Source of the DNA: Macrostomum hystrix
Taxonomy: Eukaryota > Animalia > Platyhelminthes
Reading direction: 5' to 3'
Assembly (NCBI GenBank): GCA_950097015.1
Contig: CATNEN010000039.1
Coordinates: 14,694,001 to 14,758,000, forward strand
DNA: 64,000 nucleotides
A model generated the notes under the pieces. It had not been told where the DNA came from. It did no database searches and saw only the letters and a list, made by a program, of their open reading frames with translations. Both the position numbers and the translations under genes were made by a program. Every line of letters starts with the position of its first letter. The stretch's first letter is position 1. Shown piece after piece: positions 3,034 through 31,900 of the stretch.

Positions 3034-4857
3034 TGCTGGCAAGTATTTGTTAAATGGGCGTCACCAGAAGCTTTTTAATCTGAAAAGATTAAAGAATCTC
3101 AAAATAATTTTCTTCTTAAATCTACACTCGTAGTTTCTCGCCAGATTTTATAACGGCGTGTGAAAAATCAACTGTCGTCGGCACGGAGACTTATCAGGGC
3201 GTTAATGTCAACTCGCGGTGGCGCTAGCTGCTTCGTGAGAAAAATCTTCCGATTTTATTGTGAGAATCGTTTTGGAGCCACGCCTAATTTTATTTACGTG
3301 AAAACCAAGCCATTTTAGTTTCAATATATATTTTTTGTTTTCTTTCGAAAAATACGATAAACTGTCCCATAACTTATAAAAATAGACTGAAACAGTACAA
3401 CACAACTCGCTAATAAGGTGTTACGACTTTTGCCCAGGTATAAAATATCCGAAGTTAGTTACTAAAATAATACGCTAGCATAGCGTCGAGCAAAGTTAAA
3501 TACAACCACTAAAATAAAAATATGATTGAAAAAGTATTTATTTTATGACTTCAAAATTAACTATACAAGCTTACTCTATTTAAAAGAAACCAATCATAGC
3601 ATATGCTGAGAGATGGGGAATTGTATTAAACAGAATCTTGCACGCACATGTGTTACACATATGTTCATGCATTTAAGTCGGCAGGTAGACAGATGCAAAA
3701 AATATCTGATATCCAGTATCGTACGCTCGTAATTGACTATTAAAAAGCACATATGTTACTTGCCCTTTCCTGCGACTGATAAACATCATCTAGCCTATTT
3801 TACTAGGTAGCTGTATATACATATTTACTAATATAACGGTACATGCTCCGGCCAGAGATAAAAATAAATGGTAGGGCTGTTATAAATTAGAGAATTTGCA
3901 AAAGCAGACTTGTGTTAGTGTGTTTTGTAGCACACTAAAACTAACCGGCTAACCACGCTTGATTTTTTTGAGGTTTGTTACATTTTATAGCTCAGAGTTG
4001 GGCCAGCAGATACCCTTAGAAGGTTTGTAAGAAATGTGACCATATCCCCGCGGAATCGCCTTTTTGAGACGGATTGCAAGAATTGACTACTATCACTACA
4101 GTACAAAGCTCTACTATAACGATGTGTATTCTAGTGCTCCTTGTCATTTACGTTATAAGAATACGGACACATAAATAAGTTTATGGACAGAAGCCCAACT
4201 GACAATTCTGAATTTTTCGCAATATATTGATTAAAGTTTGTAAAGTTTCAAATTAAACTTCAGTTTTAATGTAAATGTTTTCCGGTCACAGTATCTATTT
4301 AAAAGCTTTACAAACAGGAAAAACAAAACTACTTTAAAATGCACACTAAAAAGCATACTATTCGTGCGCAGCGTGTAGAAACTACTAAGATTTTACTTTT
4401 ATTATTTGCCTAAATAAAGAAACATGTTTATTGTTCTCTAAAAAATTATCTCTACTTAAAATGGTTAAGATCGAAGAATTTTCTCTGAACAAGGAACTTT
4501 CAGAATACGTTAATTGCGGGATAGTACTCTTTTGTTTTTAGTGTAAATCCAGTTGCTTAATATTATAGGGTGAAAAGCTAGTGCTTAGTAATAATAAGAA
4601 ATGTGTGCTTCTTTGTCTTATCTTTTAAAGTATTTTAATGTGGATGGTAATGTAGTGCATTGCGCTTGCGCTTTTGGATTTGATAGTGTACATTGGTGTG
4701 CGATTCACTATTTAGACTGTGTATGATGCTTTTTATTTTAATTGAGCTATTTTTTGCAGAGCATGGACCTAATTTTTCGTATGGTACAGAAGTTAGAAAA
4801 ATCTAACACTTATTCTTATTTCTTAGCACTTTTTATGTCAAGTGATCAGATGCAAAG

Positions 4858-6990: not shown

Positions 6991-8607
6991 ATGCAGGCTG
7001 GCTCCTCCATTGTAGTCACTAGTGGGAGCAAGCTGCCCCAGATTTATCCTTGGCCAGTTGGCAGCAATTTTTACCAGCTGGCTGCGCCAACCGTCAGTCA
7101 ACAGGTGGCTGGCGTGGCCAATGCGGCTGCGTCTAATTCTGTCAACACACCCCGAGAAGAGCATAGAGGTTCATCTGTAGCCTACTCGCAGGAGGAGCTT
7201 AGAAAATTCCGCGCTCTACCGAGAACTGTACAAGAATCTTTATTTGGCTATGAAACTCTGGTTCGGAGTTGCTTTATTGATTATGCCATCAACGGAGATG
7301 CATCAAAGTCGATTGAAGACCTAGTTAGAGGAGCGCCCGAGTTTCTTCAAACGGTCGACAATCGGCTATACGGCGAAAGTCCGCTAGGCAAAGCGCTTTT
7401 GAAAAAGAACCAAGAGGCTAGTCGATGCTTTATCAGGCTGGCCGACAGTAGCGGTCAGAGAAATGCGGTTCTGTCGCATAGGAACTCCGCTGGCCACACT
7501 CTCTTAATGCTGGCCGTAGATTTAGACAGTTCAGATTGCAAAGATATTCTTGTCGCACTTTTGCAATATTATCCTGCTCAAATCTATCGGTTTTATGATG
7601 GCGAGGGTCGCAACGTGTTCCACTTTTGCGCTGTCGACAGGTACGCAGCCTCATTTCGGATCATTTTGGACGCTGTGCTACAAATGGACACCGTAGAGAT
7701 TAGCAAGTCGAGCATACTTGAAGCTTTAGACATGACGGATCGATTCCATAAGACGCCAATTCACTACATTGCCGAGTCTGGCGACATTGAAATGTTTAAC
7801 ATGCTGGACTCTTTTGCTCGAAGCAGATCCATTGTAGTGGACTATGATAGCCGCTTCAAGACTAGTGTTAGCAAGACTCCACTGATGGTTGCAGTCGAGT
7901 CGAATCATTTCGATGTTTGCAAATGGCTGCTAGAGAAAGGCCACGTTGATGTCTCAGTAAAGCAGCCAGTCTCATGTTTCACAGCGCTGCACTTTGCAGT
8001 CAAGTTAGGAAGGCCTGAACTCATTGGACTGCTCAGATTGCACGGAGCATCGTCTGAGTTCTATGATGACGAGTGCGAGATGCTTGAGAATTACAAAACA
8101 CCGCTAGAATTGGTTAAAGAGGATTATCAGATTCCTAACAGAGAAATTTGTCTGGAATACCTATTAAAAGATAAGAGTCACTTCAAGCGCAAATATGAAT
8201 ACACGGTGGACTCACTTCCTAGAACTCTCTCAGTAGCTGGGCCGTCGTCTCTCTCGTCGCCATCTTCCTCTCAATCTGAGGCGCAGCAGTTTAATCCCGC
8301 AGAATTTCTTCGCAAAAAGAAAATTGTGACAGACCTGCAGCTGTTTAGCAGCGAACGTCGAGGTGAACTGTCGTTGCGTCTTGCTCGACTCGGCAAATCA
8401 GAGCTGTTCGTTGATCAGCTTATGAAGTACGTGCCTGATCTGGAGGCTGATTTCAAGTACATCGTCAGCTCTTCAGACCCGGTCTTCAATGCCATAACAG
8501 TCTTATCCGACACTGAACAGGCGTCTCGATTTGTGATCAAACAGGTGCTGCTAGACATTGAGGCCGACGAGCTTGTCGAACTGGTGATTCCGGCAACTAC
8601 CTCCTAA
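6991..8607 (+). CDS. Ankyrin-repeat protein with C-terminal death-fold-like domain; NF-kB p105/p100 C-terminal-half (IkB-gamma)-like, copy 1
   Basis: Six full and one partial ANK repeat, pre-ANK motif FIDYAINGD, Ser-rich linker, helical C-terminal domain at ~8326-8590. First in-frame ATG at 6991. An acceptor at 6971 (ccattgcag) leaves open an upstream coding exon. Confidence 0.8.
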   Translation: MQAGSSIVVTSGSKLPQIYPWPVGSNFYQLAAPTVSQQVAGVANAAASNSVNTPREEHRGSSVAYSQEELRKFRALPRTVQESLFGYETLVRSCFIDYAINGDASKSIEDLVRGAPEFLQTVDNRLYGESPLGKALLKKNQEASRCFIRLADSSGQRNAVLSHRNSAGHTLLMLAVDLDSSDCKDILVALLQYYPAQIYRFYDGEGRNVFHFCAVDRYAASFRIILDAVLQMDTVEISKSSILEALDMTDRFHKTPIHYIAESGDIEMFNMLDSFARSRSIVVDYDSRFKTSVSKTPLMVAVESNHFDVCKWLLEKGHVDVSVKQPVSCFTALHFAVKLGRPELIGLLRLHGASSEFYDDECEMLENYKTPLELVKEDYQIPNREICLEYLLKDKSHFKRKYEYTVDSLPRTLSVAGPSSLSSPSSSQSEAQQFNPAEFLRKKKIVTDLQLFSSERRGELSLRLARLGKSELFVDQLMKYVPDLEADFKYIVSSSDPVFNAITVLSDTEQASRFVIKQVLLDIEADELVELVIPATTS

Positions 8608-10419
8608 GTAACTAGATGATGGCGGGCTTCGTGTTAGTTTTCGTTGGCAAGTTTAGATGTATTCCAATATTGTTTTAAACTAGGTTTCATCTAGTGTCAA
8701 GTGTCTCATCTTTGTTGTTTGAAATTCATGATACAGCTATACGTGACGAACTATGTCGATGGGTGATTAAAAACCTATTCCTTTAAAGGCCACATTGTGT
8801 GCCAAAATAAGCCGAAATTACATTTGCATCTATTGAATTTGTATGACTGACAGGGCATAAAACGCCAGGCTTTAGGTTATATGACTCTTTGAGATTGAGC
8901 TGAAAAACATCAGTCGTTCTTAAAGACCTCGGACCTTCTTAACTGAGGCTTCTGTAGCCCGTATAGGTCAAGTTTTTTCTACCAGACGTTGCACCATCCA
9001 TACAACTCAAGGTTATTTTTCTGATTATTCAGCTGCTTCCAAGCTGGACAGAGGCGAATGCTGTGATGCATTGAGCTAATTTTAAGTTGCTCGCACTTAA
9101 GGATAAATCGGCATCTTGTTCGCTAGCACTTAAAATCTGTACATCTGTACATCTGTACATACATAAGTCAAGACAAGCAGAACTTTTTAATCACCCGTCG
9201 GTAAAGTTGTTAAAGACTGTTAGAAAAATATCTATTTGTTTTTTAATGTTGTTTTTTCTTACCTTTCTTAGTAATAAATATTATAAAAGTCATTCTCAAT
9301 GTGCCTTTGCAAACAGTGTTTTTTCTGGCAGCTCGATTGTGCACGCATTCACATCGATTGCTGAAGACACGCGTGTTTCTTGGGAATTAAAAATTGTGTA
9401 ATAAAATTTTGTTGTTCTTTAAAACTATTTGATCATTGCCAATATAGTGGACTGCTTGAATCACTACTTTAGCGCACTGTCAACTAGTGCGTCAACTAGT
9501 TTTTTGAATCAGAACTTCTTGATGCACATTTGCCCTTTCTGACTTATAACTGTTGTGCTGCACAGCGATGAAGTAATAGAATGTAATTCTGCGACTAGTG
9601 CGGACATTCCTGTATTGAATTCTAATCTCCACCACATCATAATCAAAGTGTTGCACAATGGTAGCGTATCACATCAAACAAAATTTCGTCTAACCCTCCC
9701 CCAGGTACACTGCCTGACGACGAAAAAAGTCATAAGGTTAAAAATCATCACTATGCAATTTACTTTTGTTAAAAAAATTGACGTAGTTCTTGTTAAATTG
9801 TTATTTTTTAATTATGAAGACGACTTCCAATTCTGCTTCTAATTCGAAAACAATTTTTTTCGTAACAAACTAGAAGCATTGTCGAATGTCTGAAGCGAAA
9901 TTGTCTTTGACCTTCTATTGATTTAGTTAATTTTGTCGCATATTTTTCCTGGCGTTTTGTATGAAATATGACGAATTGCGACATGCTATCACATAGTTTA
10001 AAATTAATTTTGTTCACCCAATGTATTACGCTAATTACTAAGCTATATTTAATGTCAATGTACAGGTTCAGTTATGAGTATACGAAGTATATATTAATGA
10101 TATTACTCTACTGATCTTCGCACAATTAGTCCGATGGCGGACTAGTTAGATGTACAGTGCTTGAAATAAACAACACGTGCAGTTTGTGCTTTATGCTATA
10201 ACTGTTGCGTGCTCTGCAGCTGTAATAAAGGGGTGACCGACTGCCGCTAGATTTGCGAAGTGGCTCATCACATTCGATTTCATTAGTCTAATATGTCTCA
10301 AAATTTTAAGTGTTTTTTTTCAAAATTTTTGATTAGATTGTTCTGTATTATGTACCCTAGAGAGATACATAAAGGAAATTAGCCCTAGCCCATACGTTCA
10401 GCCAGAGCCATATCCGCAG

Positions 10420-10580
10420 CTATTGCGCAACGCTTCCAAAGGCTGTGTGTGTACAACTGCTTAGTCCGTGGACTCAGAGAGGCCATCGCACCCAACCTAA
10501 ATTTCTATCAAGCAGAGATCCGAACTCCCGACCTCTGGGTCAGAAGTTCAGAGCACTAACCATTGGTCTTAACCGCTTTA
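10420..10580 (-). mobile_element. Internally deleted SINE of the same family
   Basis: Minus strand reads TGGTTAGTGCT...GGGAGTTCGGATC (A/B boxes), then GGTTGGGTG...AGTCCACGGACTAAGCAGTTGTA, matching the 3' part of the 5668 copy. Confidence 0.55.
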
Positions 10581-11092
10581 ACCAAATGACCCATTTTGTG
10601 AAAGCCCACCATGTGGATCAAAGTTTTCCACCCTTCGCAATGAACTAGCTTTCAAAGTCGTCGGAGTCAGCGTCCAGATATTCAGCGATTCTTGTCTAAG
10701 ACCCAGGTGACAAGGACAAAAGACATTACTCTGTATAAACCTCTATGGTGAGTCATATTGGTTATCTTATATGCGAGTAATATAATATTTTCTGAGCAGA
10801 AAAATGATGCCTATATTCGTGAATTTGGCACCAGACACTTCGACAAGAATCGTTGAATATCTTGCCGATGACGATGTTTTTTGTTATTCTGGAACTTTTT
10901 TCATCAGAAAGAGCGGAAAATTTAGTTCGTGATTCTGCATTTTCATGGGTGATAGGTTGAATATTTTGAGAGATGCATGAGAAAAAAAATGTGGATATTT
11001 GAAATCCCCTAAAAATGCGTTTTGATAAAAAAATTTCTGACAGTAAATTAAATAAATCAGTTCCAGAGTGCATTGCTGGCTGGTTGCATTGG

Positions 11093-12334
11093 ATGGCTCA
11101 AAGCCAGTGTCCCGCTGCTAGTGTCGGCAGTAACCAGGCCTTCCTGCAATCGCCAGAGGAGGCCAATGGTGTGGAAGCACTCCGCAGCATCGATTCCTGG
11201 CCGTCTCAGGTCGAGAGTGTAACGCTGACCGAGCACTTGTCAGCGCAATCTTCGATGGATCCTGTGTCAGTTTTTTGTCGGATGAGCGGCCCAGTCCAGA
11301 GAGAGTTCGCCTATTATCCAGGAATTGTCAAGCAGGCCTTCTCAATGTATGCCGACACTGGCAATGCTGGCAGCGTTATTGAGTGGGTAGTAGAAGAAAT
11401 CAGTTCGATGCTTTTCCGTCAAGATCATACTGGCTACATTCCGATAGAAGCAGCCCTGGAGGCGCGCAATGGAGCTGCGGTGAAACGAATGTTAGAAATT
11501 GCAAAGCGTTCTGGATCAGTGTTGCTTGAAAGACTGCTGAAATACAAAAATCCAAGATTTAAGCACTCTCTGCTGATGCTTGCTGTGAAGCTTAACAGCC
11601 GAGAGTATGCGGATATTTTTCACGAACTGGTCAACTACGATCCCGGCTGTATCTACCGCTGCTATGATGACTCGGGAAGGAATGTGTTCCACTGGTGCGC
11701 CAAGCACGGATGCACCACCTCCATTGATATTGTTTTCGGCCTCTTAATTGAGCGCTTCAGAAAAGGCATTTTTCCAAATCAGTGTCTAAACGAAATTATA
11801 AAGGCTTTAGAAATGCCAGACAGACGAAAGAATACGCCGATGCACTATGTCGCTTCTTCTGGTAATCTTGACATGCTGAAAAGTATTCAGGCGTTTCTAA
11901 ATTCCACTAATTTGGAGCTCGATTTCGACGCCCATTTTGTAAGCAGTAACAGCTTAACACCGCTAGTGCTAGCTGTTCAAAGTGAAACATATGAAACTTG
12001 CAAGTGGCTGCTCGAGAATGGCTCTGTTGATGTGCACTTCAAACAGCGCTCCACCTGTCTGACAGCTCTGCACTTTGCTGTGAGAGCTGGCAATCCTGAG
12101 CTCATTGCTCTGCTGATGAAGCACGGCGCGGATTTCGACTACACGGACAGTGACTGCGCCGATTTGGCTGGCTACAAGACACCTCTGGACATGGCTCTGT
12201 CTGAGGACATACCGCGGAGAGAGGCTTGCCTGCGCTGCCTGCGATCAGCAAGCTCGTCGACTTTGGCATCCCTGCCCGGCGCCGTCTCAGGCCGGGCATT
12301 GGGTGACGTGACCAATGCTTTTCTTCCTATTTGA
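11093..12334 (+). CDS. Ankyrin-repeat IkB-gamma-like paralog, copy 2 (no death domain)
   Basis: Intronless ORF aligning with the other copies. The ATG at 11093 (MAQSQ) is preferred over 11015 by paralog alignment. Motifs YADTGN, GRNVFH, TPMHY, TALHFAV, TPLDMA. Confidence 0.85.
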   Translation: MAQSQCPAASVGSNQAFLQSPEEANGVEALRSIDSWPSQVESVTLTEHLSAQSSMDPVSVFCRMSGPVQREFAYYPGIVKQAFSMYADTGNAGSVIEWVVEEISSMLFRQDHTGYIPIEAALEARNGAAVKRMLEIAKRSGSVLLERLLKYKNPRFKHSLLMLAVKLNSREYADIFHELVNYDPGCIYRCYDDSGRNVFHWCAKHGCTTSIDIVFGLLIERFRKGIFPNQCLNEIIKALEMPDRRKNTPMHYVASSGNLDMLKSIQAFLNSTNLELDFDAHFVSSNSLTPLVLAVQSETYETCKWLLENGSVDVHFKQRSTCLTALHFAVRAGNPELIALLMKHGADFDYTDSDCADLAGYKTPLDMALSEDIPRREACLRCLRSASSSTLASLPGAVSGRALGDVTNAFLPI

Positions 12335-12434
12335 TACTCTTGGGCTTTGTTGTGTGGCGTCACTCTTCTAAGCGAGACTCGAAAAATAAAAGATTCGTTA
12401 GATTTTTTTTCTTCGTTTTTCCATTGTTCTAGAG

Positions 12435-12515
12435 CAGGGGTCGGCAAACTCCGGCCCGCGGGACAGATGAGGCCCTCAAAGCTCCCAAATCCGGCCCGTT
12501 GCCCGAACACCTATA
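12435..12515 (+). mobile_element. hAT/Charlie-type transposon terminus (fragment)
   Basis: CAGGGGTCGGCAAACTCCGGCCCGCGGG...GGCCC, preceded by TTCTAGAG, which fits the Charlie NTCTAGAN target consensus. The opposite end is degenerate. Confidence 0.65.
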
Positions 12516-13202
12516 GTATCCTGTCTCATATCGCCCGTGTCTCATCTCTCCTGTTCCTCATCTCTCCCCTGTCTCATCTCTCCCGTGTCTCATCTCTCTT
12601 TATTATCTTTTGTTCATTGTACTTTCAAAGAATTATCAAGTGATTGGCAAACAAATAAGTGTAGTTCTTAGCTTGTATTTTATATTTGCTCCTTGTTTCT
12701 TGCCTGCCCAGAAGTATGTTTTTGACTTGTAAAGTGTTGCTTATCCTGTATCTGCTGTTTATTTTTATATAGAATGTCTCCATGTGTGCCCTTTTTGCAC
12801 ATTGTTAGCTATTGGCAGGATTATGCTCATTGATTTAAGGCATTGTGCCTTTCCAAAGATTACAACTGTTTATGAATAATTATTATATGTTCTACTTTTT
12901 GTATTTTGAAAGGCTATAGAATTAAAAATCTAAAACTAATTAATTTCCTTACATACTAAAAGCTTACCACACAGGTCTCAATTAAACAAATTCGTTTAAA
13001 ACTAAATAATCAAGAGTAAAGTACTTTCTCTGAATCTTCTAAAGTGCAAAATTACATTTTACGATAGTTTTATCTCTCATGTTTGTTGCAGTAGAAATAA
13101 TTTGTAAAGAAGGCACATGAGAAGTGTTCTGTGTTTCCCCATTCTCGATACAGACTCAAATAAGCCACTATTCTATCTTGCAGCTCATAATTACTAGACA
13201 AA

Positions 13203-14339
13203 ATGGAATCGGAGACCAACGAGGAGAGGCCATTTCTCGTGGCACAAACGGACGGTGCCGCCCGGACCTTAAACAGAATCGACTCGTGGCCATCTTTCCT
13301 TTGCACCTCGAGCTTACCCCAAGAAGTGGCTGTTCATTCAGCTGATGAGATGCTCAATAAATTTCGTTCGCTTCCTGTTTCCATTCAGGAAGAGATTGCT
13401 GCATATCCTTTGATTGTTAAACAGGCCTTTCAATCCTATGCGGCATCAGGTGACTTGGAGGATGCTGTTAACTGGTTGGTTGGACAACTTCCTGGAATGC
13501 TATTTCGGACGAGTCAGACTGAATGCCCCCGAATTCCAATGGAAGTGGCACTTGAAGCAGGGAATGTGGCTGCAGTGATGCGTATGTTAGACACAGCACA
13601 GCAGCACTCGGGGTTGCTCGATAGACTGCTCGGATATAGGAATCGTCAATTTGGACACACTATGCTGATGCTTGCAGTCCATCTAAATAGCCGTAAAGAC
13701 AGTTTCCTAATCCACACAATGCTTAGCTTCGACCCGTGTGCGCTTCACCGTTGCTATGACAACAGAGGCAGGAATGTTTTCCACATTTGCGCTCAGTCGG
13801 GGCTTAGCGTAGCCTTTCAAATAATATTTGGCCTCCTTATCGAGTTTCCTGATGTATACAGTACAATAGGTCCGTTGGAAGTGAAGAAAGCGCTGGAAAT
13901 GACAGACTCAGACAAATATACACCGCTTCACTATATTTCCTCAACCGGTAAGACAGGCATGTTTGCGACATTAAAAACTTTCCTGGACCACGTAGATTTG
14001 ACAATTAACTTTGACACTTGTTTCAAATGTGGCAACACTTTGACTCCATTGATGATTGGTGTGAAGAACGGACACTTCGAGGTGTGCGAATGGCTGCTGG
14101 AGAACGGCTCTGTTGATGTGCACTTCAAGCAGCACTCAACCTGTCTGACAGCGCTGCACTTTGCTGTGAGAGCAGGCAATCCTGAGCTCATTGCTCTGCT
14201 GATGCGGCACGGGGCTGATCCAGAGTTTTATAACAGCTACTGTGATTACTTGGATGATTACAAGACTCCTTTGGAGCTTGCCCGAACTGAGAGCATTCGG
14301 AACAAGGATGCTTGCATTCGGTGCCTGGAGACACGTTAG
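13203..14339 (+). CDS. Ankyrin-repeat IkB-gamma-like paralog, copy 3
   Basis: 378-aa intronless ORF with the same motif order (YAASGD, GHTMLMLAV, GRNVFH, TPLHY, TPLMI, TALHFAV, TPLELA). Confidence 0.9.
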   Translation: MESETNEERPFLVAQTDGAARTLNRIDSWPSFLCTSSLPQEVAVHSADEMLNKFRSLPVSIQEEIAAYPLIVKQAFQSYAASGDLEDAVNWLVGQLPGMLFRTSQTECPRIPMEVALEAGNVAAVMRMLDTAQQHSGLLDRLLGYRNRQFGHTMLMLAVHLNSRKDSFLIHTMLSFDPCALHRCYDNRGRNVFHICAQSGLSVAFQIIFGLLIEFPDVYSTIGPLEVKKALEMTDSDKYTPLHYISSTGKTGMFATLKTFLDHVDLTINFDTCFKCGNTLTPLMIGVKNGHFEVCEWLLENGSVDVHFKQHSTCLTALHFAVRAGNPELIALLMRHGADPEFYNSYCDYLDDYKTPLELARTESIRNKDACIRCLETR

Positions 14340-14920
14340 TATCTTACGCACTTCCCAAATGCCAGATTGTGATGTTTTTAATAATGACCTAAATAATCTG
14401 TAAGACATTCTTTTATAATCGTTTTAGCTTTTGTTTGCATAATTTGCAAGCAGAACATTGTGTTTTAACCCTTCTCATCCAATCCGGCCTAAGTATAAGT
14501 GTTTTTATATTTTAATTATCGCCAACTTGTCTTTTATTTTTTATTTTTGTAAGGTTTATAATTTCTTGTTTAATTATATAAGCTCGCTGTATTCTATTAT
14601 TTCTCTCTGAGTGACTGCATGACAGTAAAATTTTTGTCTCTGCTTTACAATCTTTTGTCTACTAGCTTTCTCTCTTTGTTGTCTTAAAAATTCAATTTGG
14701 CAAAGTTCTGGCAAAATTTAGGCAAATTTTCGAAAGCAGAGTTTTAGCTGTGCTTGGGTCACCAAAGACATTCTACATTCTCGTAGCTTTAGGCAGCTCA
14801 CAATTTTACGTGTGTATTTCAGCTATTTTAAACGATGAAGACCTCTAACAAAACCACTCACCACTCCTTTGCAGCGTATTAAAATAATCTAGAAAAGTCA
14901 AACAGTGCATCCTTTGCCTG

Positions 14921-16045
14921 ATGTCGGGAGAAACTGACCTGCCGTTTCTCCAGGCTCCAGCTGACGATGGTGGAGTCGGTTCATTCAACAGCATCGAATC
15001 GTGGCCATCTCTTGTTTTAAAGACTGACACGTCGGATCAGCTGATCATGTCCACGTCAGAACAGATGCTAAAAACATATTGTTCAATGCCCGTTAGAATC
15101 CAGGCAGAGTTCGCTGACTACCCCCGAATAGTGAGACTGTCATTTCAAAGATATGCAGAAGCGGGTGACCCTCTGGATGCAGTGAGCTGGTTGGTAGGCA
15201 AACTGCCTCACATGATGTTTCGGACTGACCAGACTGGCTACATTCCGATCGAAGCAGCTCTTGAAGCAGGCAACGGGGCTTCAGCGAGGCAGATGCTGAG
15301 ACTGGCTGAGCTTTTTGGATCAGACGACAGGCTTGCCAGATACAGAAATCCTCGATATGGATACACTCTGCTGATGCTAGCTGTACATCTGAACAGAAAG
15401 GAATATTCAGACATATTTCTGCAACTGCTAAGCCACGATGTATCCGGATTGCACCGATGCTATGATAGCGACGGAAAGAATGTGTTTCACAGGTGCACAG
15501 AGCTTGGATTTAGCGTTTCCTTTCAAATCATTTTTGGTCTGTTGATTGAGCACCGTGATACGCTCTTGGGATGCAGCCCTCCAGAGATTAAAAGTGCATT
15601 CGAGATGACTGACTCTAGTAAAAACACACCCCTTCACTATATCGCTGCCTCTGGAAAAGTAGAGATGTTTCAAGTTCTTAAGACCTTTTTGATTCGAATG
15701 AATTTGGTGATTGACTTTGACTCTTGCTTTAAGTGCAGCAGCTCCGTTACTCCACTGATTGTTGGAGTACAGAGGGGACACTTGGAGGTGTGCGAATGGC
15801 TGCTGGAGAACGGCTCTGTTGATGTGCACTTCAAGCAGCACTCAACCTGTCTGACAGCGCTGCACTTTGCTGTGAGAGCTGGCAATCCTGAGCTCATTGC
15901 TCTGCTGATGAAGCACGGGGCTGATCCAGAGTTTTATAACAGCTACTGTGATTACTTGGATGATTACAAGACTCCTTTGGAGCTTGCCCGAACTGAGAGC
16001 ATTCGGAACAAGGATGCTTGCATTCGGTGCCTGGAGACACGTTAG
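14921..16045 (+). CDS. Ankyrin-repeat IkB-gamma-like paralog, copy 4 (chimera of copy 6 5' part and copy 3 3' end)
   Basis: 374-aa ORF, near-identical to copy 6 up to ...LLMKHGA and identical to copy 3 thereafter, including the 3' flank. Confidence 0.9.
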   Translation: MSGETDLPFLQAPADDGGVGSFNSIESWPSLVLKTDTSDQLIMSTSEQMLKTYCSMPVRIQAEFADYPRIVRLSFQRYAEAGDPLDAVSWLVGKLPHMMFRTDQTGYIPIEAALEAGNGASARQMLRLAELFGSDDRLARYRNPRYGYTLLMLAVHLNRKEYSDIFLQLLSHDVSGLHRCYDSDGKNVFHRCTELGFSVSFQIIFGLLIEHRDTLLGCSPPEIKSAFEMTDSSKNTPLHYIAASGKVEMFQVLKTFLIRMNLVIDFDSCFKCSSSVTPLIVGVQRGHLEVCEWLLENGSVDVHFKQHSTCLTALHFAVRAGNPELIALLMKHGADPEFYNSYCDYLDDYKTPLELARTESIRNKDACIRCLETR

Positions 16046-16554
16046 TATCTTACGCACTTCCCAAATGCCAGATTGTGATGTTTTTAATAATGACCTAAAT
16101 AATCTGTAAGACATTCTTTTATAATCGTTTTAGCTTTTGTTTGCATAATTTGCAAGCAGAACATTGTGTTTTAACCCTTCTCATCCAATCCGGCCTAAGT
16201 ATAAGTGTTTTTATATTTTAATTATCGCCAACTTGTCTTTTATTTTTTATTTTTGTAAGGTTTATAATTTCTTGTTTAATTATATAAGCTCGCTGTATTC
16301 TATTATTTCTCTCTGAGTGACTGCATGACAGTAAAATTTTTGTCTCTGCTTTACAATCTTTTGCCTACTAGCTTTCTCTCTTTGTTGTCTTAAAAATTCA
16401 ATTTGGCAAAGCTGCTTCGGTCCTGAAATATAAAAATTCGATTTTGAAGTAAAAAATATTCCGATTGCGACATATATATTAAATTTTCTAAAGAAAGAAC
16501 TTTTAGTTTTATTAATTTGTTTTTTTAGGATCTTTCGATAGGATGCATTCCCCA

Positions 16555-16890
16555 TGCCTTAGGCTGCACTTTCCCTAGGCTGCACATTCCCTAAGCTGCA
16601 CATTCCCTAAGCTGCACATTCCCTAAGCTGCACATTCCCTAGGCTGCACATTCCCTAAGCTGCATATTCCCTAAGCTGCACATTCCCTAATAATAACTGC
16701 AGGAGGGCGGCGGGCAATGGCACATCATTTGGTGACACTAGACCCGCAGCCAGCGACGCGGCAATTCTGCCCATTTCGCTGACTCCTCAGCAGTTTTACA
16801 TTTTACATTCCCCGAGCTGCACATTTTTTAAACTGCACATTCCCCGAGCTGCACATTTTTTAAACTGCACATTCCCCGACCTGCACATTT
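16555..16890. repeat. 16-bp minisatellite (CATTCCCTAAGCTGCA)n and derived copies
   Basis: About 8 tandem copies at 16555-16690, with variant copies at 16800-16890. Confidence 0.9.
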
Positions 16891-17137
16891 CTTTAACGCC
16901 CGGCAACGCTAGCTGAAATTGAGCCTCTGAACTCAATGACAGATTGTTTCCCTTGGGCTTACTGGGTTAGCTTAAACTATTATACGAGTGTGCATACAAA
17001 GGACCACAGGTAATCACACTTTACTGAAGTAGTTGATAATATTTATTTGAAGACGCCTTTCATTTCAGCTAGTCGAAACAGCAGATGCACAGTTGAACCA
17101 CCCAGTGCGCCATGCTGTTGCACTAAATAGATGAAAA

Positions 17138-18244
17138 ATGGCGGACGAACCGTTTCTGAAGGCTCCTGTTGACGAGCATCTACTGCGTATACTAGACAAC
17201 ATTCGCGCCTTGCCTCGACTGAAAGAAGATAGCCCATTGGCTGGCGCCTCGGCCAAAGAAATGCGGAGCGTATTTTTTAGAATGCCACCCTACGTTCAGG
17301 AAGAGTTAATCAATTCATCAGACATTGTGCAGCAAGCCCTGAATCAATATGCCCAATCAGGTGATCCAGCAAAAACTATTTTATGGATTGTTGGTCGGCT
17401 TCCAGCAATGCTGTTCATAACTGATCAGACTCACTATATTCCCATTGAAGCAGCACTTGAGTCGGGTAACGGAGCTGCTGTGAGGTTTATGTTAAGCGTT
17501 GCAGAGCGTTCTCAAACTCTGCCCAAGCTTCTGAAGTATAAGAATCGGCGATTTGGGCATTCTTTGATCATGCTCGCTGTCAATTTGAATACATGGGAGT
17601 GTGCCGACATTCTTCATAAACTGATGAGTGGCAACCCATCTGAACTTCATCGATGCTACGACTCGGAGGGTCGGAATGTGTTTCACCGATGCACAGAATT
17701 TGGTTTCAGCACATCCTTTCAAATCATCTGCAATTTCATTATGTCGCATGCGAAATCACATTTAACCAAAGTTTTAGCTGAATTAAAGAACGCTCTTGAA
17801 ATGACAGATAAGAGAAAAAGAACACCAATTCACAATATTTTGGCATCCGGCAGTGTACAAATGCTGGTCAGCTTGAAGCGCCTACTAGACTTTGTAAATA
17901 TAAAATTGGATTTCGATTCTTCTTTTAAAAGCAGTTCCTCTGTCACACCTTTAATAGTTGGTGTGCAGAGTGGACATTTTGAGGCGTGCAAATGGCTGCT
18001 GGACAATGGTTCTGTTGATGTGCACTTCAAGCAGCCCTCGACCTGTCTGACAGCGCTGCACTTTGCTGTGAGAGCAGGCAATCCTGAGCTCATTGCTTTG
18101 CTGGTTCGGCACGGGGCAAATCCTGAGTTCTACGATAGCAACTGTGAGCAATCGGAAGGCTACCAGACCCCACTGGAACTGGCGCGGACGGAGGAAATTC
18201 CCAATAAGCAGGCTTGTTTAGAGGCACTGCTCAACAGTAATTAG
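17138..18244 (+). CDS. Ankyrin-repeat IkB-gamma-like paralog, copy 5
   Basis: 368-aa intronless ORF with ALNQYAQSGD, GRNVFH, TALHFAV, TPLELA. Confidence 0.9.
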   Translation: MADEPFLKAPVDEHLLRILDNIRALPRLKEDSPLAGASAKEMRSVFFRMPPYVQEELINSSDIVQQALNQYAQSGDPAKTILWIVGRLPAMLFITDQTHYIPIEAALESGNGAAVRFMLSVAERSQTLPKLLKYKNRRFGHSLIMLAVNLNTWECADILHKLMSGNPSELHRCYDSEGRNVFHRCTEFGFSTSFQIICNFIMSHAKSHLTKVLAELKNALEMTDKRKRTPIHNILASGSVQMLVSLKRLLDFVNIKLDFDSSFKSSSSVTPLIVGVQSGHFEACKWLLDNGSVDVHFKQPSTCLTALHFAVRAGNPELIALLVRHGANPEFYDSNCEQSEGYQTPLELARTEEIPNKQACLEALLNSN

Positions 18245-18862
18245 AAAAGCTAGTTTAGTCTAGCTTGTAGCTCGGAACAAACACAAAGTTCAAGTTTGCT
18301 ACGTCAGTTAGAATCCATTTTCGAAGTCGATTCTAATTAATATTTCTCCATTGACTTTGTTCAAGTAAAGAGGTAGATGCGTTCCGCAATTTATTTTTTC
18401 TATTTTAATGACTCGTTAAGGCAATGCCCAATGCTAAAACTATTATGATATTTTCTTCAGTCGCACTCTTGATTAGTTTACATGAATTTAACCAAATAAA
18501 CGCATGGCCTTATAACTTTTTGAAGTCTCGCCTAATTTTACCTTGCGACTTTCGTTGTGCCTTCTAACTATAATATATTAGCAGCTTTAGCACCCCTGTT
18601 TCTCTCTGTCTCGCTCTGAGCTCGGTCGTTTCTCTTAAATTTCCTAATTTTGTCCGGAGTTTCTGTATTGATTTATCGAAAGCAGAGTTTTAGCTGTGCT
18701 TGGGTCACCAAAGACATTCTAGCTTTAGGCAGCTCACAATTTTACGTGTGCATGAGTATTTCAGCCATTTTAAACGATGAAGACCTCTAACAAAACCACT
18801 CACCACTCCTTTGCAGCATATTAAAATAATCTAGAAAAGTCAAAAAGTGCATCATTTGCCTG

Positions 18863-19993
18863 ATGCCGGGAGAAACTGACCTGCCGTTTCTCCAGGCTCC
18901 AGCTGACGATGGTGGAGTCGGTTCATTCAACAGCATCGAATCGTGGCCATCTCTTGTTTTAAAGACTGACACGTCGGATCAGCTGATCATGTCCACGTCA
19001 GAACAGATGCTAAAAACATATTGTTCAATGCCCGTTAGAATCCAGGTAGAGTTCGCTGACTACCCCCGAATAGTGAGACTGTCATTTCAAAGATATGCAG
19101 AAGCGGGTGACCCTCTGGATGCAGTGAGCTGGTTGGTAGGCAAACTGCCTCACATGATGTTTCGGACTGACCAGACTGGCTACATTCCGATCGAAGCAGC
19201 TCTTGAAGCAGGCAACGGGGCTTCAGCGAGGCAGATGCTGAGACTGGCTGAGCTTTTTGGATCAGACGACAGGCTTGCCAGATACAGAAATCCTCGATAT
19301 GGATACACTCTGCTGATGCTAGCTGTACATCTGAACAGAAAGGAATATTCAGACATATTTCTGCAACTGCTAAGCCACGATGTATCCGGATTGCACCGAT
19401 GCTATGATAGCGACGGAAAGAATGTGTTTCACAGGTGCACAGAGCTTGGATTTAGCGTTTCCTTTCAAATCATTTTTGGTCTGTTGATTGAGCACCGTGA
19501 TACGCTCTTGGGATGCAGCCCTCCAGAGATTAAAAGTGCATTCGAGATGACTGACTCTAGTAAAAACACACCCCTTCACTATATCGCTGCCTCTGGAAAA
19601 GTAGAGATGTTTCAAGTTCTTAAGACCTTTTTGATTCGAATGAATTTGGTGATTGACTTTGACTCTTGCTTTAAGTGCAGCAGCTCCGTTACTCCACTGA
19701 TTGTTGGAGTACAGAGGGGACACTTCGAGGTGTGCGAATGGCTGCTAGAGAACGGCTCTGTTGATGTGCACTTCAAGCAGCACTCGACCTGTCTGACAGC
19801 GCTGCACTTTGCTGTGAGAGCAGGCAATCCTGAGCTCATTGCTCTGCTGATGAAGCACGGAGCGAGTCCAGAGTTTTATGACGATGAGTGCGCCCAGTTA
19901 GAAGGCTACAAGACACCATTAGAGCTGGCGCGAGCGGGCGGAATCCCGAACAAGCAGGCCTGCATTGGTTGCCTTGAACAGGAACGTTGTTGA
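18863..19993 (+). CDS. Ankyrin-repeat IkB-gamma-like paralog, copy 6
   Basis: 376-aa intronless ORF with the same motifs and a unique 3' end. Confidence 0.9.
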   Translation: MPGETDLPFLQAPADDGGVGSFNSIESWPSLVLKTDTSDQLIMSTSEQMLKTYCSMPVRIQVEFADYPRIVRLSFQRYAEAGDPLDAVSWLVGKLPHMMFRTDQTGYIPIEAALEAGNGASARQMLRLAELFGSDDRLARYRNPRYGYTLLMLAVHLNRKEYSDIFLQLLSHDVSGLHRCYDSDGKNVFHRCTELGFSVSFQIIFGLLIEHRDTLLGCSPPEIKSAFEMTDSSKNTPLHYIAASGKVEMFQVLKTFLIRMNLVIDFDSCFKCSSSVTPLIVGVQRGHFEVCEWLLENGSVDVHFKQHSTCLTALHFAVRAGNPELIALLMKHGASPEFYDDECAQLEGYKTPLELARAGGIPNKQACIGCLEQERC

Positions 19994-28988: not shown

Positions 28989-31900
28989 CTAAGCTTCAGC
29001 TGAGCTTCGCCACACAGTGGTCACTGCGGCCACCGCGGCGAATACGGCGATTTTTGCGGCGGCAGTAAGGCCCAGGGTGGACGCCGCTTTGTTTGCAGCG
29101 TAGAAGACTGCGATGTTGTTGGAGGCCGACGCGGTGTTGGAGGCCACAGTGCTGTTGGTGGCCGTGGTGCTGTTGGAGGCCGCGTTGGTGTTGGACGCCA
29201 CGTTGGTGTTGAAAGCCGCGATGGTGTTGGAGGCCGCGGTGGTGTTCGAGGCCGTGGTGTTGCTGAAGGCCGCGTTGTTACTGGAGGCCGCGGTGGTTCC
29301 GGAGGGTGGGTTGCACCTGTCCCAACTACAGATGGAGCACTTGTCGATATTTCTGAACCGATGAACGCAATAAAATTTTGATGCACACTTGCCTTGGGTC
29401 TGCAATGTTGGAGAGATAGACAGGAGTCGAAATTCAACCATTCAGTGTTAATTAGTAAACGGCACAGCCTAATAAAAGCAGCAGCTTACCACGTGACATC
29501 CATTTTGGTAGTAAGTGATAGAAAGGCATCCCATGCCTTCTGCAGGGCAATCCTTTTCTACAATTATTGTTGGCACTGCTTTAAACAGTTTTGAAATTGA
29601 ATAATGGTAGCAACGAAGGCGGCTCCCATTAAATGAGGACTCGATGCTGAGGTTCAACCATTCATTTTCGGGGGGCACAATGTTCTTGGAGGCAACGGTG
29701 GTGTTGGAGGCCACGATGGTGTTGGGGGCCGTAGTTGTGTCGGAGGCCGCGATGGTATTGGAGGCCGCGATCGTGCTTAAGGCCGCGTTCGTGTTGGAGA
29801 CCACGATGGTGTTGGGGTCCGTAGTTGTGTCGGAGGCCGTCCTGGTGTTGGTGGCCGCCATTGTGTTAGAGGCTGTGGTGGTGTCAGAGACCGCATTGGT
29901 GATGGAGGCCGCGATGGTGTTGGGGGCCGTAGTTGTGGAGGAGGCATTCATGGTGTTGGTGGCTGACATTGTGTTAGAGGCCTCGATGGTGTTGGATGCC
30001 GTAATGGTGTTGGAGGCCGTGGTGGTGTCGGAGGCCGCGATGGTATTGGAGGCCGCGATCGTGCTTAAGACCGCGTTCGTGTTGGAGACCACGATGGTGT
30101 TGGGGTCCGTAGTTGTGTCGGAGGCCGTCCTGGTGTTGGTGGCCGCCATTGTGTTAGAGGCTGTGGTGGTGTCAGAGACCGCATTGGTGATGGAGGCCGC
30201 GATGGTGTTGGGGGCCGTAGTTGTGGAGGAGGCATTCATGGTGTTGGTGGCTGACATTGTGTTAGAGGCCTCGATGGTGTTGGATGCCGTAATGGTGTTG
30301 GAGGCCGTGGTTGTGTCGGAGGCCGTCATGGTGTTGGTGGCCGACATTGTGTTAGAGGCCTCGTTGGTGTTGGATGCCGACGTAATGGTGTCGGAGGCCG
30401 TGGTGGTGTCGGAGGCCGCGATGGTATTGGAGTCTGCGATGGTGTTCGAAGCCACGTATGTGTTCGAGGCGACGATGGTGTTGGATGCCGTATTGGTGTC
30501 GGTGGCCACGATGGTATTGGAGGCCGCGATGGTGTTCGAGGCCGCGTTAGTGTTAGAGGCGACGATGGTGTTGGAGGCCGTGGTGGTGTCGGAGGCCGTC
30601 ATGGTGTGGGTGGCCGAAATTGTTTTAGAGGCCTCGATGGTGTTGGATGCCGTAATGGTGTTGGAGGCCGTGGTGGTGTCGGAGGCCGTCATGGTGTTGG
30701 TGGCCGCCATTGTGTTAGAGGCCTCGATGGTGTTGGATGCCGTAATGGTGTTGGAGGCCGAGGTGGTGTCGGAGGCCGCGATGGTATTGGAGTCTACGAT
30801 GGTGTTCGAGGCCGCGTATGTGCTAGAGGCGACGATGGTGATGGAGGCCGTGGTGGTGTCGGAGACCGCGTTGGTGTTGGAGGCCGCGGTGGTGTTCGAG
30901 GACCCGTTTGTGTTAGTTGCTGCGAGGGTGTTAGTGGACGCAATTGTGTTTGAGGCCTCGACGGTGATGGAGGCCGTGGTGGTGTCGGTGGCCGCGTTGG
31001 TGTTGGAGGCCTTGTTAGTGTTGGAGGCCCAGTTTGTTCCGGAGGGTGGGTTGCACCTGTCCCAACTACAGATGGAGCAGTTGTCGATATTTCTGAACCG
31101 CTCAACGCAATGAAATTTCGATGCACACATGCCTTGGGTCTGCAATGTTGGAGAGATAGACAGGAGTCGAAATTCAACCATTCAGTGTTAATTAGTAAAC
31201 GGCACAGCCTAATGAAAGCAGCAGCTTACCACGTGAGATCCATTTTGGTAGTAAGTGATAGAAAGGCATCCCATGCCTTCTGCAGGGCAATCCTTTTCTA
31301 CAATTATCTCTGGCACTGCTTTAAACAGTTTTGAAATTAAATAATGGTAGCAACGAAGGCGGCTCCCATTAAATGAGGACGCGATGCTGAGGTTGAGCCA
31401 TTTATTTTCGGAGGGCACAATGTTCTTGGAGGCAACGGTGGTGTTGGAGGACGCTATCGTGCTTGAGGCCGCGATGGTGTTGGAGGCAACGATGGTGTTG
31501 GAGGCCGTGGTGGTGTCGGAGGCCGTCATGGTGTTGGTGGCCGACATTGTGTTAGAGGCCTCGATGGTGTTGGATGCCGTGATGGTGTTGGAGGCTGCGG
31601 TGGTGTCGGAGGCCGTGATGGTATTGGACTCCGCGATGGTGTTTGAGGCCGCGTTTGTGTTAGAGGCGACGATGGTGTTGAAGGCCGTGGTGGTGTCGGA
31701 GGCCGCGTTAGTTTTGGAGGCCGCGATGGTGTTGGATGCCGTAATGGTGTTGGAGGCTGCGGTGGTGTCGGAGGCCGTGATGGTATTGGACTCCGCGATG
31801 GTGTTTGAGGCCGCGTTTGTGTTAGAGGCGACGATGGTGTTGAAGGCCGTGGTGGTGTCGGAGGCCGCGTTGGTGTTGGAGGCCGCGGTGGTGTTCGAGG

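What the first reader, a model, noticed from the sequence alone, without database searches (positions are those of the whole stretch)
6991..19993. Six-gene tandem array of stand-alone NF-kB p105/p100 C-terminal halves (IkB-gamma-like)
Seen: six intronless same-strand paralogs, each with 6 full plus 1 partial ankyrin repeats. Recalled p105 hallmarks appear in order: (a) the pre-ankyrin helix ALFDYAVTGD matches FIDYAINGD / FSMYADTGN / FQSYAASGD / FQRYAEAGD / LNQYAQSGD; (b) an acidic insert between ANK6 and the partial ANK7, p105 GADP..EN....D...TPLDMA versus GADPEFYNSYCDYLDDYKTPLELA and GADFDY...TPLDMA; (c) a death-domain-like region after the repeats in copy 1. No Rel homology domain is visible in the window. 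Inference: a split NF-kB precursor (fission is known in Nematostella) whose inhibitory half expanded and diversified into an IkB repertoire. This would be notable if the host is a flatworm, a group where NF-kB signalling is often reported as reduced.
Basis: partly seen in the sequence, partly recalled or inferred. Interest (0 to 1): 0.85.

Follow-up and report, generated by a model that had tools for sequence, protein, structure and literature searches.

The report
Flatworm ankyrin plus death-like gene array
Six neighbouring, expressed, intronless genes of the flatworm Macrostomum hystrix encode ankyrin-repeat proteins of a family seen only in Macrostomum, whose full-length members end in a divergent death-like domain; the layout resembles the inhibitory half of NF-kB p105, but nothing shows that it descends from it or acts like it.

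Summary
Six same-strand open frames (6991-19993) encode paralogous ankyrin proteins. RNA-like contigs are colinear with copies 3-5. Contigs over copies 4 (or its near-twin 6) and 5 carry the Macrostomum spliced leader.

The host is Macrostomum hystrix; the assembly size and contig number match exactly.

- **Two claimed p105 hallmarks are ordinary ankyrin features.** These are the YAxxGD helix and the loop insert before the last repeat. Sequence, profile, fold and language-model searches place the repeats among generic ankyrin proteins. IkB, Bcl-3 and p100 tie with gankyrin, Notch, FEM1 and designed proteins.
- **The third hallmark is tentatively real.** Copy 1 and at least seven dispersed paralogs end in a confidently predicted six-helix domain. 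It resembles death domains weakly but consistently, though Pfam does not detect it.
- **Copies 2-6 lost the tail.** They form one clade that lost it before the M. hystrix / M. lignano split.
- **Possible partners exist.** The genome has eight divergent Rel-like exons, three NFAT5-like loci and a MyD88-like gene. No ankyrin repeats lie beside any Rel homology locus.
- **No IkB signalling marks were found.** There is no DSGxxS degron, and no IKK or NEMO marker.

Verdict: a Macrostomum-restricted ankyrin plus death-like family. The IkB reading is not excluded (about 0.17) and is unproven.

The parts
6991..8607 (+). Copy 1: the full-length family member. It has a disordered N-terminus, a cap helix pair, about seven ankyrin repeats, a Ser-rich disordered linker and a death-like C-terminal domain.
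   Evidence: ORF; Pfam ankyrin only; AF2 model m42c9474de3ba; M. lignano orthologs P0121/P0122 at 54% identity over the tail.
8332..8586 (+). Death-like six-helix tail of copy 1 (residues 448-532).
   Evidence: pLDDT 83-96 with six helices. Best PDB profile hit is the NRADD death domain, E 0.19. hhalign against 12 Pfam-detected M. hystrix death domains gives E 2.6e-4, in register. The score of 25.6 compares with a column-shuffled null of 8.2 +/- 1.6, reached by 0 of 200 shuffles. The top three ESM Atlas clusters are Death. Pfam itself finds nothing even at E 10.
11015..12334 (+). Copy 2: a tail-less ankyrin paralog with a short, non-death C-terminal remnant.
13203..14339 (+). Copy 3: a tail-less ankyrin paralog. 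An RNA-like contig starts at 13183, directly after a TTGCAG acceptor.
14921..16045 (+). Copy 4: a tail-less paralog and recent twin of copy 6 (dS 0.098). A spliced leader is joined just after TTTGCAG at about 14875-14877. The two bases after the leader match copy 6 rather than copy 4, so this contig may come from copy 6.
   Evidence: Loose end GCGAAGACTCAATTTATTGCATG in run X3 equals the 3' part of the M. lignano spliced leader (PMC8629364).
17138..18244 (+). Copy 5: a tail-less paralog. A spliced leader is joined at 17068, after TTTCAG.
   Evidence: The same loose end appears in runs X3 and X9.
18863..19993 (+). Copy 6: a tail-less paralog whose upstream acceptor is almost identical to that of copy 4.
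   Evidence: A DNA contig joint 'goes back 3942', which shows the 3.9-kb duplicated unit.
14103..14216 (+). A 114-nt cassette in repeat 6 (NGSVDV...HGA), homogenised among copies 2-6. It also lies at 12017-12130, 15809-15922, 18005-18118 and 19751-19864.
   Evidence: Nucleotide identity is 89-97% and third-position identity 0.84-0.87, against about 0.57 and 0.47 elsewhere.

Best explanation
The array belongs to a family seen only in Macrostomum. Its ancestral form has four parts: a short disordered N-terminus, an ankyrin stack of a cap plus about seven repeats, a Ser-rich linker, and a divergent death-fold domain.

Copy 1 keeps that form. Copies 2-6 descend from one ancestor that lost the tail before M. 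hystrix and M. lignano split. They then multiplied in tandem separately in each species, and a 114-nt stretch of repeat 6 was kept uniform by gene conversion.

The genes are intronless. Copies 3-5 are covered by RNA-like contigs. Spliced-leader ends lie at the acceptors upstream of copy 4 (or its near-twin 6) and copy 5. The spacing is operon-like.

The likely working (inferred, not shown): the ankyrin groove binds a client protein, and the death-like domain of full-length members docks that complex onto other death-fold proteins (the genome has MyD88-like, DAPK-like and UPA-death proteins). The tail-less copies bind the same or related clients without docking, so they act as competitors or buffers. 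Whether the client is a Rel-like factor is open.
For: **The genes and their relatives**
- Six ORFs with only ankyrin Pfam hits.
- Nearest relatives are M. lignano hypothetical proteins at 55-58% identity; everything else is generic ankyrin.
- The genome is M. hystrix (220,453,370 bp, 42 contigs).
- At least nine dispersed paralog loci lie on C10 (three), C41 (two, identical in score to C10 loci), C32, C3 (two) and C8. Seven of them carry the same tail; weaker ankyrin-only matches lie on C7 and C38.

**The tail**
- It is a six-helix domain, pLDDT 83-96.
- It resembles death domains in three independent weak tests, backed by a shuffle control with 0 of 200 reaching the observed score.
- The tail profile finds only M. 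lignano proteins among 1.84 billion representatives.

**Evolution and expression**
- In the tree, the tail-less clade has 100/100 support and is sister to copy 1 plus P0121/P0122. Other subfamilies hold M. hystrix / M. lignano pairs.
- dN/dS is about 0.2-0.3 and dS is saturated, except between copies 4 and 6.
- The cassette is homogenised.
- RNA-like contigs and spliced-leader ends were seen.
- Death-fold partners are present in the genome.
Against: - Pfam does not recognise the tail as a death domain. The profile matches are weak (hhalign probability about 42%; PDB E 0.19).
- No binding partner was identified.
- The adaptor/competitor mechanism is inference from domain architecture only.
- The runs used for expression are contigs of uncertain library type, so levels, tissues and exact transcript ends are unknown.
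Confidence: 0.6

Rival explanations
1. One reading: the family derives from the C-terminal half of an NF-kB p105/p100-type precursor (ankyrin repeats plus death domain). It serves as IkB-like inhibitors of the divergent Rel-like RHD proteins of Macrostomum, with the tail-less copies forming a diversified IkB repertoire.
For: - The full-length architecture is about seven ankyrin repeats followed by a death-like domain, as in p105/p100/IkB-gamma.
- Eight Rel-like RHD exons lie in three tandem clusters. Tested on one of the C7 exons, the best PDB matches are p65, RelB and p50, not NFAT.
- None of the RHD loci has ankyrin repeats within the 20-30 kb fetched around it.
- A MyD88-like gene is present.
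- Planarian RHD factors are likewise reported as divergent, and that paper does not mention IkB or ankyrin proteins (PMC13563047).
Against: - The ESM Atlas gives generic ankyrin clusters.
- The cap helix is generic. 92 of 116 unrelated ankyrin proteins carry the relaxed hxxxAxxG[DN] motif.
- There is no DSGxxS degron.
- No IKK scaffold or NEMO domain was found.
- Five of the six genes lack the tail.
- Other ankyrin plus death families exist.
- There is no synteny with the RHD loci.
Confidence: 0.17
2. The family is a divergent offshoot of the stand-alone ANKDD1-type proteins (ankyrin repeats plus a C-terminal death domain), or of another ankyrin...death gene such as DAPK or ankyrin. It would have a role unrelated to NF-kB.
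For: - It has the same stand-alone architecture and a similar size (420-540 aa).
- The genome holds other ankyrin...death genes, such as a DAPK-like ankyrin-COR-death ORF at C38:30.80 Mb.
- That ANKDD1 has this layout is from general knowledge, not tested here.
Against: - No reference ANKDD1 sequence could be brought in by reference, so nothing was compared.
- HMMER with the tail profile reaches no canonical death-domain protein at all.
- The repeat number (cap + 7) is lower than I recall for ANKDD1 (9-10).
Confidence: 0.13
3. The tail is not a death fold. The array is simply a fast-evolving, lineage-specific cluster of ankyrin binding proteins with no link to death-fold or NF-kB signalling.
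For: - Pfam finds no Death match even at E 10.
- All death-domain signals are sub-threshold.
- Five of the six genes have only ankyrin repeats.
- dN is high among paralogs, 0.29-0.45.
Against: - Four independent weak signals all point to the same fold, and the alignments are in register at the domain's C-terminal end.
- No shuffled profile reached the observed score.
- The tail is conserved between the two species and across old subfamilies.
Confidence: 0.1

Closest known systems
NF-kB p105/p100 C-terminal half (IkB-gamma / IkB-delta)
   Different: - It is no closer in sequence or fold than unrelated seven-repeat proteins.
- There is no RHD in cis or nearby.
- There is no DSGxxS degron.
- The protein ends directly after the death-like domain, whereas p105 carries its degron after the death domain (general knowledge).
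- The tail is absent from copies 2-6.
- The death-like domain falls below Pfam detection.
Bcl-3 and the classical IkB proteins (IkB-alpha, -beta, -zeta)
ANKDD1A/B (ankyrin repeat and death domain containing 1)
   Same: A stand-alone ankyrin repeat array with a C-terminal death domain and a length near 500 aa (architecture from general knowledge).
   Different: It was not compared directly. I recall fewer repeats here than in ANKDD1. The family has its own N-terminal region and a death-like domain that HMMER cannot link to canonical ones.
Generic ankyrin-repeat scaffolds (gankyrin/Nas6p, Notch ANK, FEM1, ankyrin-R/B, designed ANK proteins)
   Same: These are the best sequence and profile matches and equal structural matches. 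The 'YAxxGD' cap aligns to their N-terminal cap repeats.
   Different: They lack the family-specific N-terminal segment, the insert helices between repeats 3 and 4, the aromatic-acidic loop insert before repeat 7 and the death-like tail.

Membership tests
IkB / NF-kB p105-p100 C-terminal half | A stack of six to seven ankyrin repeats. | tested here: met
   AF2 models show a cap plus seven repeats. The model aligns 1:1 with seven-repeat proteins. This feature is shared with many unrelated families.
IkB / NF-kB p105-p100 C-terminal half | An ankyrin domain specifically closer to IkB/p105 than to other ankyrin families (sequence, profile or fold). | tested here: not met
   No IkB appears among the top 60 PDB sequence or profile hits. 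In Foldseek and VIA-align, IkB members tie with gankyrin, Notch, FEM1 and DARPins. The ESM Atlas gives generic ankyrin. In the cap profile search, p100 ranks 21. No curated phylogeny could be built.
IkB / NF-kB p105-p100 C-terminal half | A death domain directly after the repeats (p105/p100 type). | tested here: inconclusive
   Copy 1 and seven dispersed paralogs have a six-helix tail with weak, consistent death-domain similarity. Pfam finds no hit. The tail is absent in copies 2-6.
IkB / NF-kB p105-p100 C-terminal half | A signal-dependent DSGxxS phospho-degron. | tested here: not met
   A regular-expression scan of all six proteins found only DTGNAGS inside the cap repeat of copy 2, and no DSGxxS.
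IkB / NF-kB p105-p100 C-terminal half | A Rel/NF-kB-class RHD partner encoded in the genome. | tested here: met
   Eight Rel-like RHD N-terminal exons lie on C7 (three plus two) and C1 (three); four score above the Pfam cut-off. One C7 exon, tested against the PDB, best matches p65, RelB and p50. This shows existence only.
IkB / NF-kB p105-p100 C-terminal half | Binds Rel dimers and masks their nuclear localisation signal. | not testable with these tools
   The dimerisation/NLS part of the Rel-like genes is split over several exons. A joined model may not be built here, so no co-fold was sent.
IkB / NF-kB p105-p100 C-terminal half | Upstream IKK complex present (IKK-beta scaffold domain, NEMO). 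| tested here: inconclusive
   Exon-wise six-frame searches with PF18397 and PF11577 found nothing. The tool warns that a blank does not show absence.
Ankyrin repeat superfamily (Pfam Ank, Ank_2-5) | Matches above the curated cut-offs. | tested here: met
   All six proteins score 71-80 bits against Ank_2, whose cut-off is 27.3.
Death domain (Pfam PF00531) | A match above the curated cut-off for the tail. | tested here: not met
   No Pfam hit at E <= 10 for residues 388-538 of copy 1. The window has no PF00531 hit in the genome-wide scan.
Death-fold superfamily | A six-helix bundle with profile-level similarity to bona fide death domains. | tested here: inconclusive
   Six helices at pLDDT 83-96. 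hhalign E 2.6e-4, probability 42%. Score 25.6 against a shuffled maximum of 16.6. NRADD is the best PDB hit at E 0.19. The top three ESM Atlas clusters are Death at 0.85. No fold search of the isolated domain was possible.
ANKDD1 | Orthology of the ankyrin and death domains to ANKDD1A/B. | not tested

The most novel reading that the evidence does not exclude
Macrostomum, and perhaps flatworms generally, regulate their expanded and highly divergent Rel-like RHD factors with a lineage-specific inhibitor family. That family would descend from the ankyrin plus death half of an ancestral p105-type NF-kB. Copy 1 and the dispersed paralogs would be the IkB-gamma-like forms, and the tail-less tandem copies a diversified IkB repertoire. 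This would supply the IkB side of flatworm NF-kB signalling.
Probability: 0.15. Interest if true: 0.7.

Novelty: new member of a known kind. Interest (0 to 1): 0.35.

Why it matters
Flatworm NF-kB signalling is poorly defined. Surveys report no p105/p50 in Platyhelminthes (PMC11432056), and only highly divergent RHD factors in planarians (PMC13563047).

This work shows that M. hystrix has three things:
- Clusters of Rel-like RHD exons.
- A MyD88-like gene.
- A Macrostomum-restricted ankyrin plus death-like family. Its layout, and nothing more so far, matches the inhibitory half of p105.

That gives concrete candidates for a binding or knock-down test in a tractable model genus.

If the IkB link fails, the locus is still a clean example of three processes: domain loss followed by tandem expansion, local gene conversion, and operon-like spliced-leader expression. 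It would otherwise be an ordinary lineage-specific ankyrin family.

Tried and rejected
1. **Sequence and profile searches of copy 1 and the family against PDB chains.** Only generic ankyrin proteins came up, with no IkB in the top 60.
2. **Foldseek and VIA-align on the copy 3 model.** IkB-family chains are present but tied with many unrelated seven-repeat proteins, so the fold cannot decide.
3. **ESM Atlas on copy 3.** Generic ankyrin clusters only.
4. **Pfam on the copy 1 tail and on the N-terminal regions at E <= 10.** Nothing.
5. **HMMER with the tail profile over 1.84 billion representatives.** Only Macrostomum lignano proteins and three low-complexity hits; no bridge to canonical death domains.
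6. **The strict [FLIVM]xxYAxxG[DN] motif in 116 unrelated ankyrin proteins.** There were 0 hits, so the tyrosine is family-typical. The relaxed cap motif is in 92 of 116, so it is no p105 hallmark.
7. **Search for ankyrin repeats next to RHD loci** (20-30 kb around the C24, C38, C26, C7 and C1 loci). None were found, while positive controls were detected. The first regular expression was too strict and was replaced by an HMM.
8. **The three RHD_dimer hits.** They turned out to be NFAT5-like, not NF-kB.
9. **IKK scaffold and NEMO Pfam searches of the genome.** Blank, and not conclusive.
10. **The look-up of encoding contigs.** It was closed, so M. lignano synteny rests only on shared contig lengths.
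11. **Complex prediction was not sent.** The dimerisation/NLS part of the Rel-like genes is split across exons and a joined model may not be built here. I also do not claim binding.
12. **A phylogeny against p105, IkB, Bcl-3 and ANKDD1 could not be built.** No such sequences were obtainable by reference.

Full report
**What is there**

The region holds six open frames on the + strand:

| Copy | Coordinates | Length |
|---|---|---|
| 1 | 6991-8607 | 538 aa from the ATG |
| 2 | 11015-12334 | 439 aa |
| 3 | 13203-14339 | 378 aa |
| 4 | 14921-16045 | 374 aa |
| 5 | 17138-18244 | 368 aa |
| 6 | 18863-19993 | 376 aa |

All six match only the Pfam ankyrin families, at E 1e-19 to 1e-22. No further fragments of the family lie in the window.

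The neighbours are unrelated. They are a formin FH2 gene at 157-3042 (-), a long tandem-repeat gene at 29-48 kb, and Helitron pieces at 56-60.5 kb.

**Host**

The window's genome has 220,453,370 bases in 42 contigs. That is exactly the published Macrostomum hystrix assembly (PMC10468722). The nearest proteins anywhere are M. lignano hypothetical proteins at 55-58% identity. Everything below them is generic ankyrin.

**Expression and gene structure**

I laid public contigs on 12900-18899.

- Run X1 covers nearly the whole stretch, like DNA.
- Run X3 leaves several inter-gene stretches uncovered (12900-13100, 16100-16500, 18700-18899). Its contigs lie at 13183-14108, 14183-14875, 14877-15814, 17068-18066 and 18068-18596, all colinear with the genome.
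- The contigs that start at 14877 and 17068 carry an unmatched 5' end, GCGAAGACTCAATTTATTGCATG. Run X9 shows the same end at 17068.

That sequence is the 3' part of the 35-nt M. lignano spliced leader (PMC8629364). It occurs 29 times in this genome, mostly in regular arrays, as expected of spliced-leader RNA genes.

Canonical acceptors (TTTGCAG, TTTCAG, TTGCAG) sit directly before these points, and before the contig start at 13183. The contig at 14877 carries CA after the leader, which matches copy 6 rather than copy 4. It may therefore come from copy 6 or an allele.

Copies 3, 4 and 5 are thus covered by RNA-like contigs without introns in the coding part. Spliced-leader ends lie at the acceptors upstream of copy 4 (or 6) and copy 5.

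The spacer between copies 3 and 4 is also covered. The spacers from each stop codon to the next acceptor are 0.5-1.0 kb. That fits the operon criterion used for M. lignano. Co-transcription itself is not shown.

**Anatomy of the proteins**

The AlphaFold model of copy 3 (pLDDT 79.6) has these parts:
- A disordered N-terminus (residues 1-45).
- Two helices, then a helix pair carrying F-x-x-Y-A-x-x-G-D (69-99).
- Seven ankyrin helix pairs (about 100-378).
- Extra helices between repeats 3 and 4.
- A short helix in an enlarged loop before repeat 7.

Conservation peaks in repeat 6. Its amino-acid sequence is almost identical in copies 2-6 and in the M. lignano orthologs. At DNA level, 114 nt there are 89-97% identical among copies 2-6, and third-position identity is 0.84-0.87. 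Elsewhere the figures are about 57% and 0.47. This points to gene conversion on top of protein-level constraint.

Overall the paralogs are old: dS is 0.9-2.6 and dN/dS about 0.2-0.3. The exception is copies 4 and 6 (dS 0.098), which belong to a 3.9-kb duplicated unit.

**Testing the three 'p105 hallmarks'**

*(a) The YAxxGD helix.* A profile of this region searched against PDB chains aligns best to ordinary ankyrin repeats and caps. The top specific hits are designed ANK proteins (residues 12-58 of 4gpm), MIB1 and latrocrustotoxin. p100 (4ot9) does match the same stretch, but only at rank 21 (E 0.017), and Bcl-3 at rank 24. The relaxed motif occurs in 92 of 116 unrelated ankyrin proteins. Only the tyrosine is family-typical. 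The helix is therefore a degenerate N-terminal ankyrin repeat and says nothing specific about p105.

*(b) The insert before repeat 7.* It is real and conserved. It is an enlargement of an ankyrin loop by about eight residues. I could not compare it with p105 by reference.

- The genome holds at least nine more distant paralog loci: C10 (three), C41 (two, identical in score to C10 loci), C32, C3 (two) and C8. Weaker ankyrin-only matches lie on C7 and C38.
- Seven of these paralogs (three on C10, one on C32, two on C3, one on C8) have the same N-terminal segment, ankyrin stack and a C-terminal tail that aligns with the tail of copy 1.
- In the model of copy 1 the tail (447-534) is a compact six-helix domain at pLDDT 83-96, behind a disordered Ser-rich linker.
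- Pfam does not see a death domain even at E 10.
- The tail profile's best PDB hit is the NRADD death domain (E 0.19), in register over helices 4-6.
- hhalign against a profile of twelve Pfam-detected death domains from this same genome gives E 2.6e-4 (probability 42%), again end-to-end in register.
- The hhalign score of 25.6 compares with 8.2 +/- 1.6 (maximum 16.6) for 200 column-shuffled profiles.
- The three nearest ESM Atlas clusters for the tail are all Death-domain clusters (score 0.85, a lead only).

I put the death fold at roughly three in four.

**Family history**

- HMMER with the tail profile over 1.84 billion representatives finds only M. lignano proteins.
- In a maximum-likelihood tree, the tail-less proteins (copies 2-6 plus M. 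lignano P0001-P0004) form one clade with 100/100 support. It is sister to copy 1 plus its M. lignano orthologs.
- Within the tail-less clade the M. lignano copies group together, and so do copies 3, 4 and 6. The other subfamilies contain M. hystrix / M. lignano pairs.
- The tail was therefore lost once, before the two species split. The short genes then multiplied, or were homogenised, separately in each species.

**Is it IkB / p105?**

Nothing places the ankyrin domain nearer to IkB proteins than to other ankyrin families.
- No IkB is among the top 60 PDB hits of copy 1 or of the family profile.
- Foldseek gives near-equal E-values to everything, with IkB-zeta at rank 13, Bcl-3 at 23 and IkB-beta at 45.
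- The ESM Atlas returns generic ankyrin clusters.
- No DSGxxS degron is present. A conserved [DE][ST]WPS motif sits in the disordered N-terminus instead.
- Searches for the IKK-beta scaffold domain and for NEMO were blank, which is weak evidence only.

- Besides three NFAT5-like loci, the genome has eight Rel-like RHD N-terminal exons in three tandem clusters: C7:0.39-0.41 Mb, C7:12.50 Mb and C1:23.99-24.02 Mb.
- One of the C7 exons, tested against the PDB, best matches p65, RelB and p50, and not NFAT.
- None has ankyrin repeats within the 20-30 kb fetched.
- This mirrors the planarian picture of several highly divergent RHD factors and a conserved NFAT5 (PMC13563047). It also fits the reported absence of p105/p50 from Platyhelminthes (PMC11432056).
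- A MyD88-like gene (death plus TIR domains) is present.

**Conclusion**

The safest description is a Macrostomum-restricted family of ankyrin plus death-like proteins. This array is one full-length gene followed by five tail-less derivatives.

Ankyrin plus death domain is the layout of the p105/p100 C-terminal half. It is also the layout of ANKDD1, DAPK and the ankyrins (a DAPK-like gene is in this genome). Architecture therefore does not establish descent from a split NF-kB.

I commit to an adaptor/competitor mechanism. The ankyrin groove binds a client. The death-like tail docks full-length members to other death-fold proteins. The tail-less copies compete for the client. This is inference, not a result. 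The IkB reading keeps about 0.17.

**Limits**

- No p105, IkB or ANKDD1 sequences could be brought in by reference, so no phylogeny against them was built.
No co-fold was therefore sent.
- The expression evidence rests on assembled contigs of uncertain library type.

Noticed in passing
window 12017-12130, 14103-14216, 15809-15922, 18005-18118, 19751-19864: A 114-nt stretch of ankyrin repeat 6 is 89-97% identical at DNA level among copies 2-6, whose remaining sequence is about 57% identical. Third-codon positions are 0.84-0.87 identical. This looks like local gene conversion. Assembly unitigs of the public runs break exactly there.
   Followed up: partly
window 13183, about 14875-14877, 17068, about 18817: Spliced-leader trans-splice acceptors (TTGCAG/TTTCAG) lie 20-70 nt upstream of the start codons. 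The spacer between copies 3 and 4 is covered by an RNA-like contig, and the stop-to-acceptor spacers are 0.5-1.0 kb. This is an operon-like arrangement; co-transcription is not shown.
   Followed up: partly
window 16690-16800: A short element between copies 4 and 5 has an enormous summed depth in the DNA run (about 900,000 against about 75 beside it), with many unlike flanks. It is a very high-copy repeat of this genome.
   Followed up: no
window about 60-80 nt into copies 2, 3, 4 and 6 (residues 26-64), and the M. lignano orthologs: A conserved short motif, [ND]SI[DE][ST]WPS[LF], sits in the otherwise disordered N-terminus. It is absent from copies 1 and 5. It could be a docking or degradation motif, but it is not the beta-TrCP DSGxxS type.
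   Followed up: no
G000 C7:389919-407456, C7:12496861-12501011, C1:23989624-24016044 (L001-L008): Eight divergent Rel-like RHD N-terminal exons (HRFRYE.E...G..GG motif) lie in three tandem clusters. The one C7 exon tested against the PDB best matches p65, RelB and p50. The dimerisation part is split over several exons and is not recognised by Pfam RHD_dimer.
   Followed up: partly
G000 C24:2419740, C38:8417063, C26:346574 (L024-L031): Three NFAT5-like loci carry well-conserved RYLTEGSRG.VKD and DC.GILKLRNADV motifs.
   Followed up: partly
G000 C38:30080800 (L059) and C38:30799414 (L061): L059 holds a MyD88-like ORF (Death plus TIR_2). L061 holds a DAPK-like ORF (ankyrin repeats, COR-A, Death). 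A THOC1 gene with a death domain (C24:1313354) and a UPA-Death ORF (C1:5495919) are also present.
   Followed up: partly
window 28989-48668: A tandem repeat with units of about 1.5 kb, strong GC skew (+0.4) and long open frames on both strands. Pfam found nothing in two units.
   Followed up: no
window 157-3042 (-) and 52.6-60.5 kb (+): A formin gene exon (FH2, E 4e-51) lies upstream of the array. Downstream are Helitron-like pieces (Helitron_like_N, Pif1 2B domain) and an STPR-repeat ORF.
   Followed up: no
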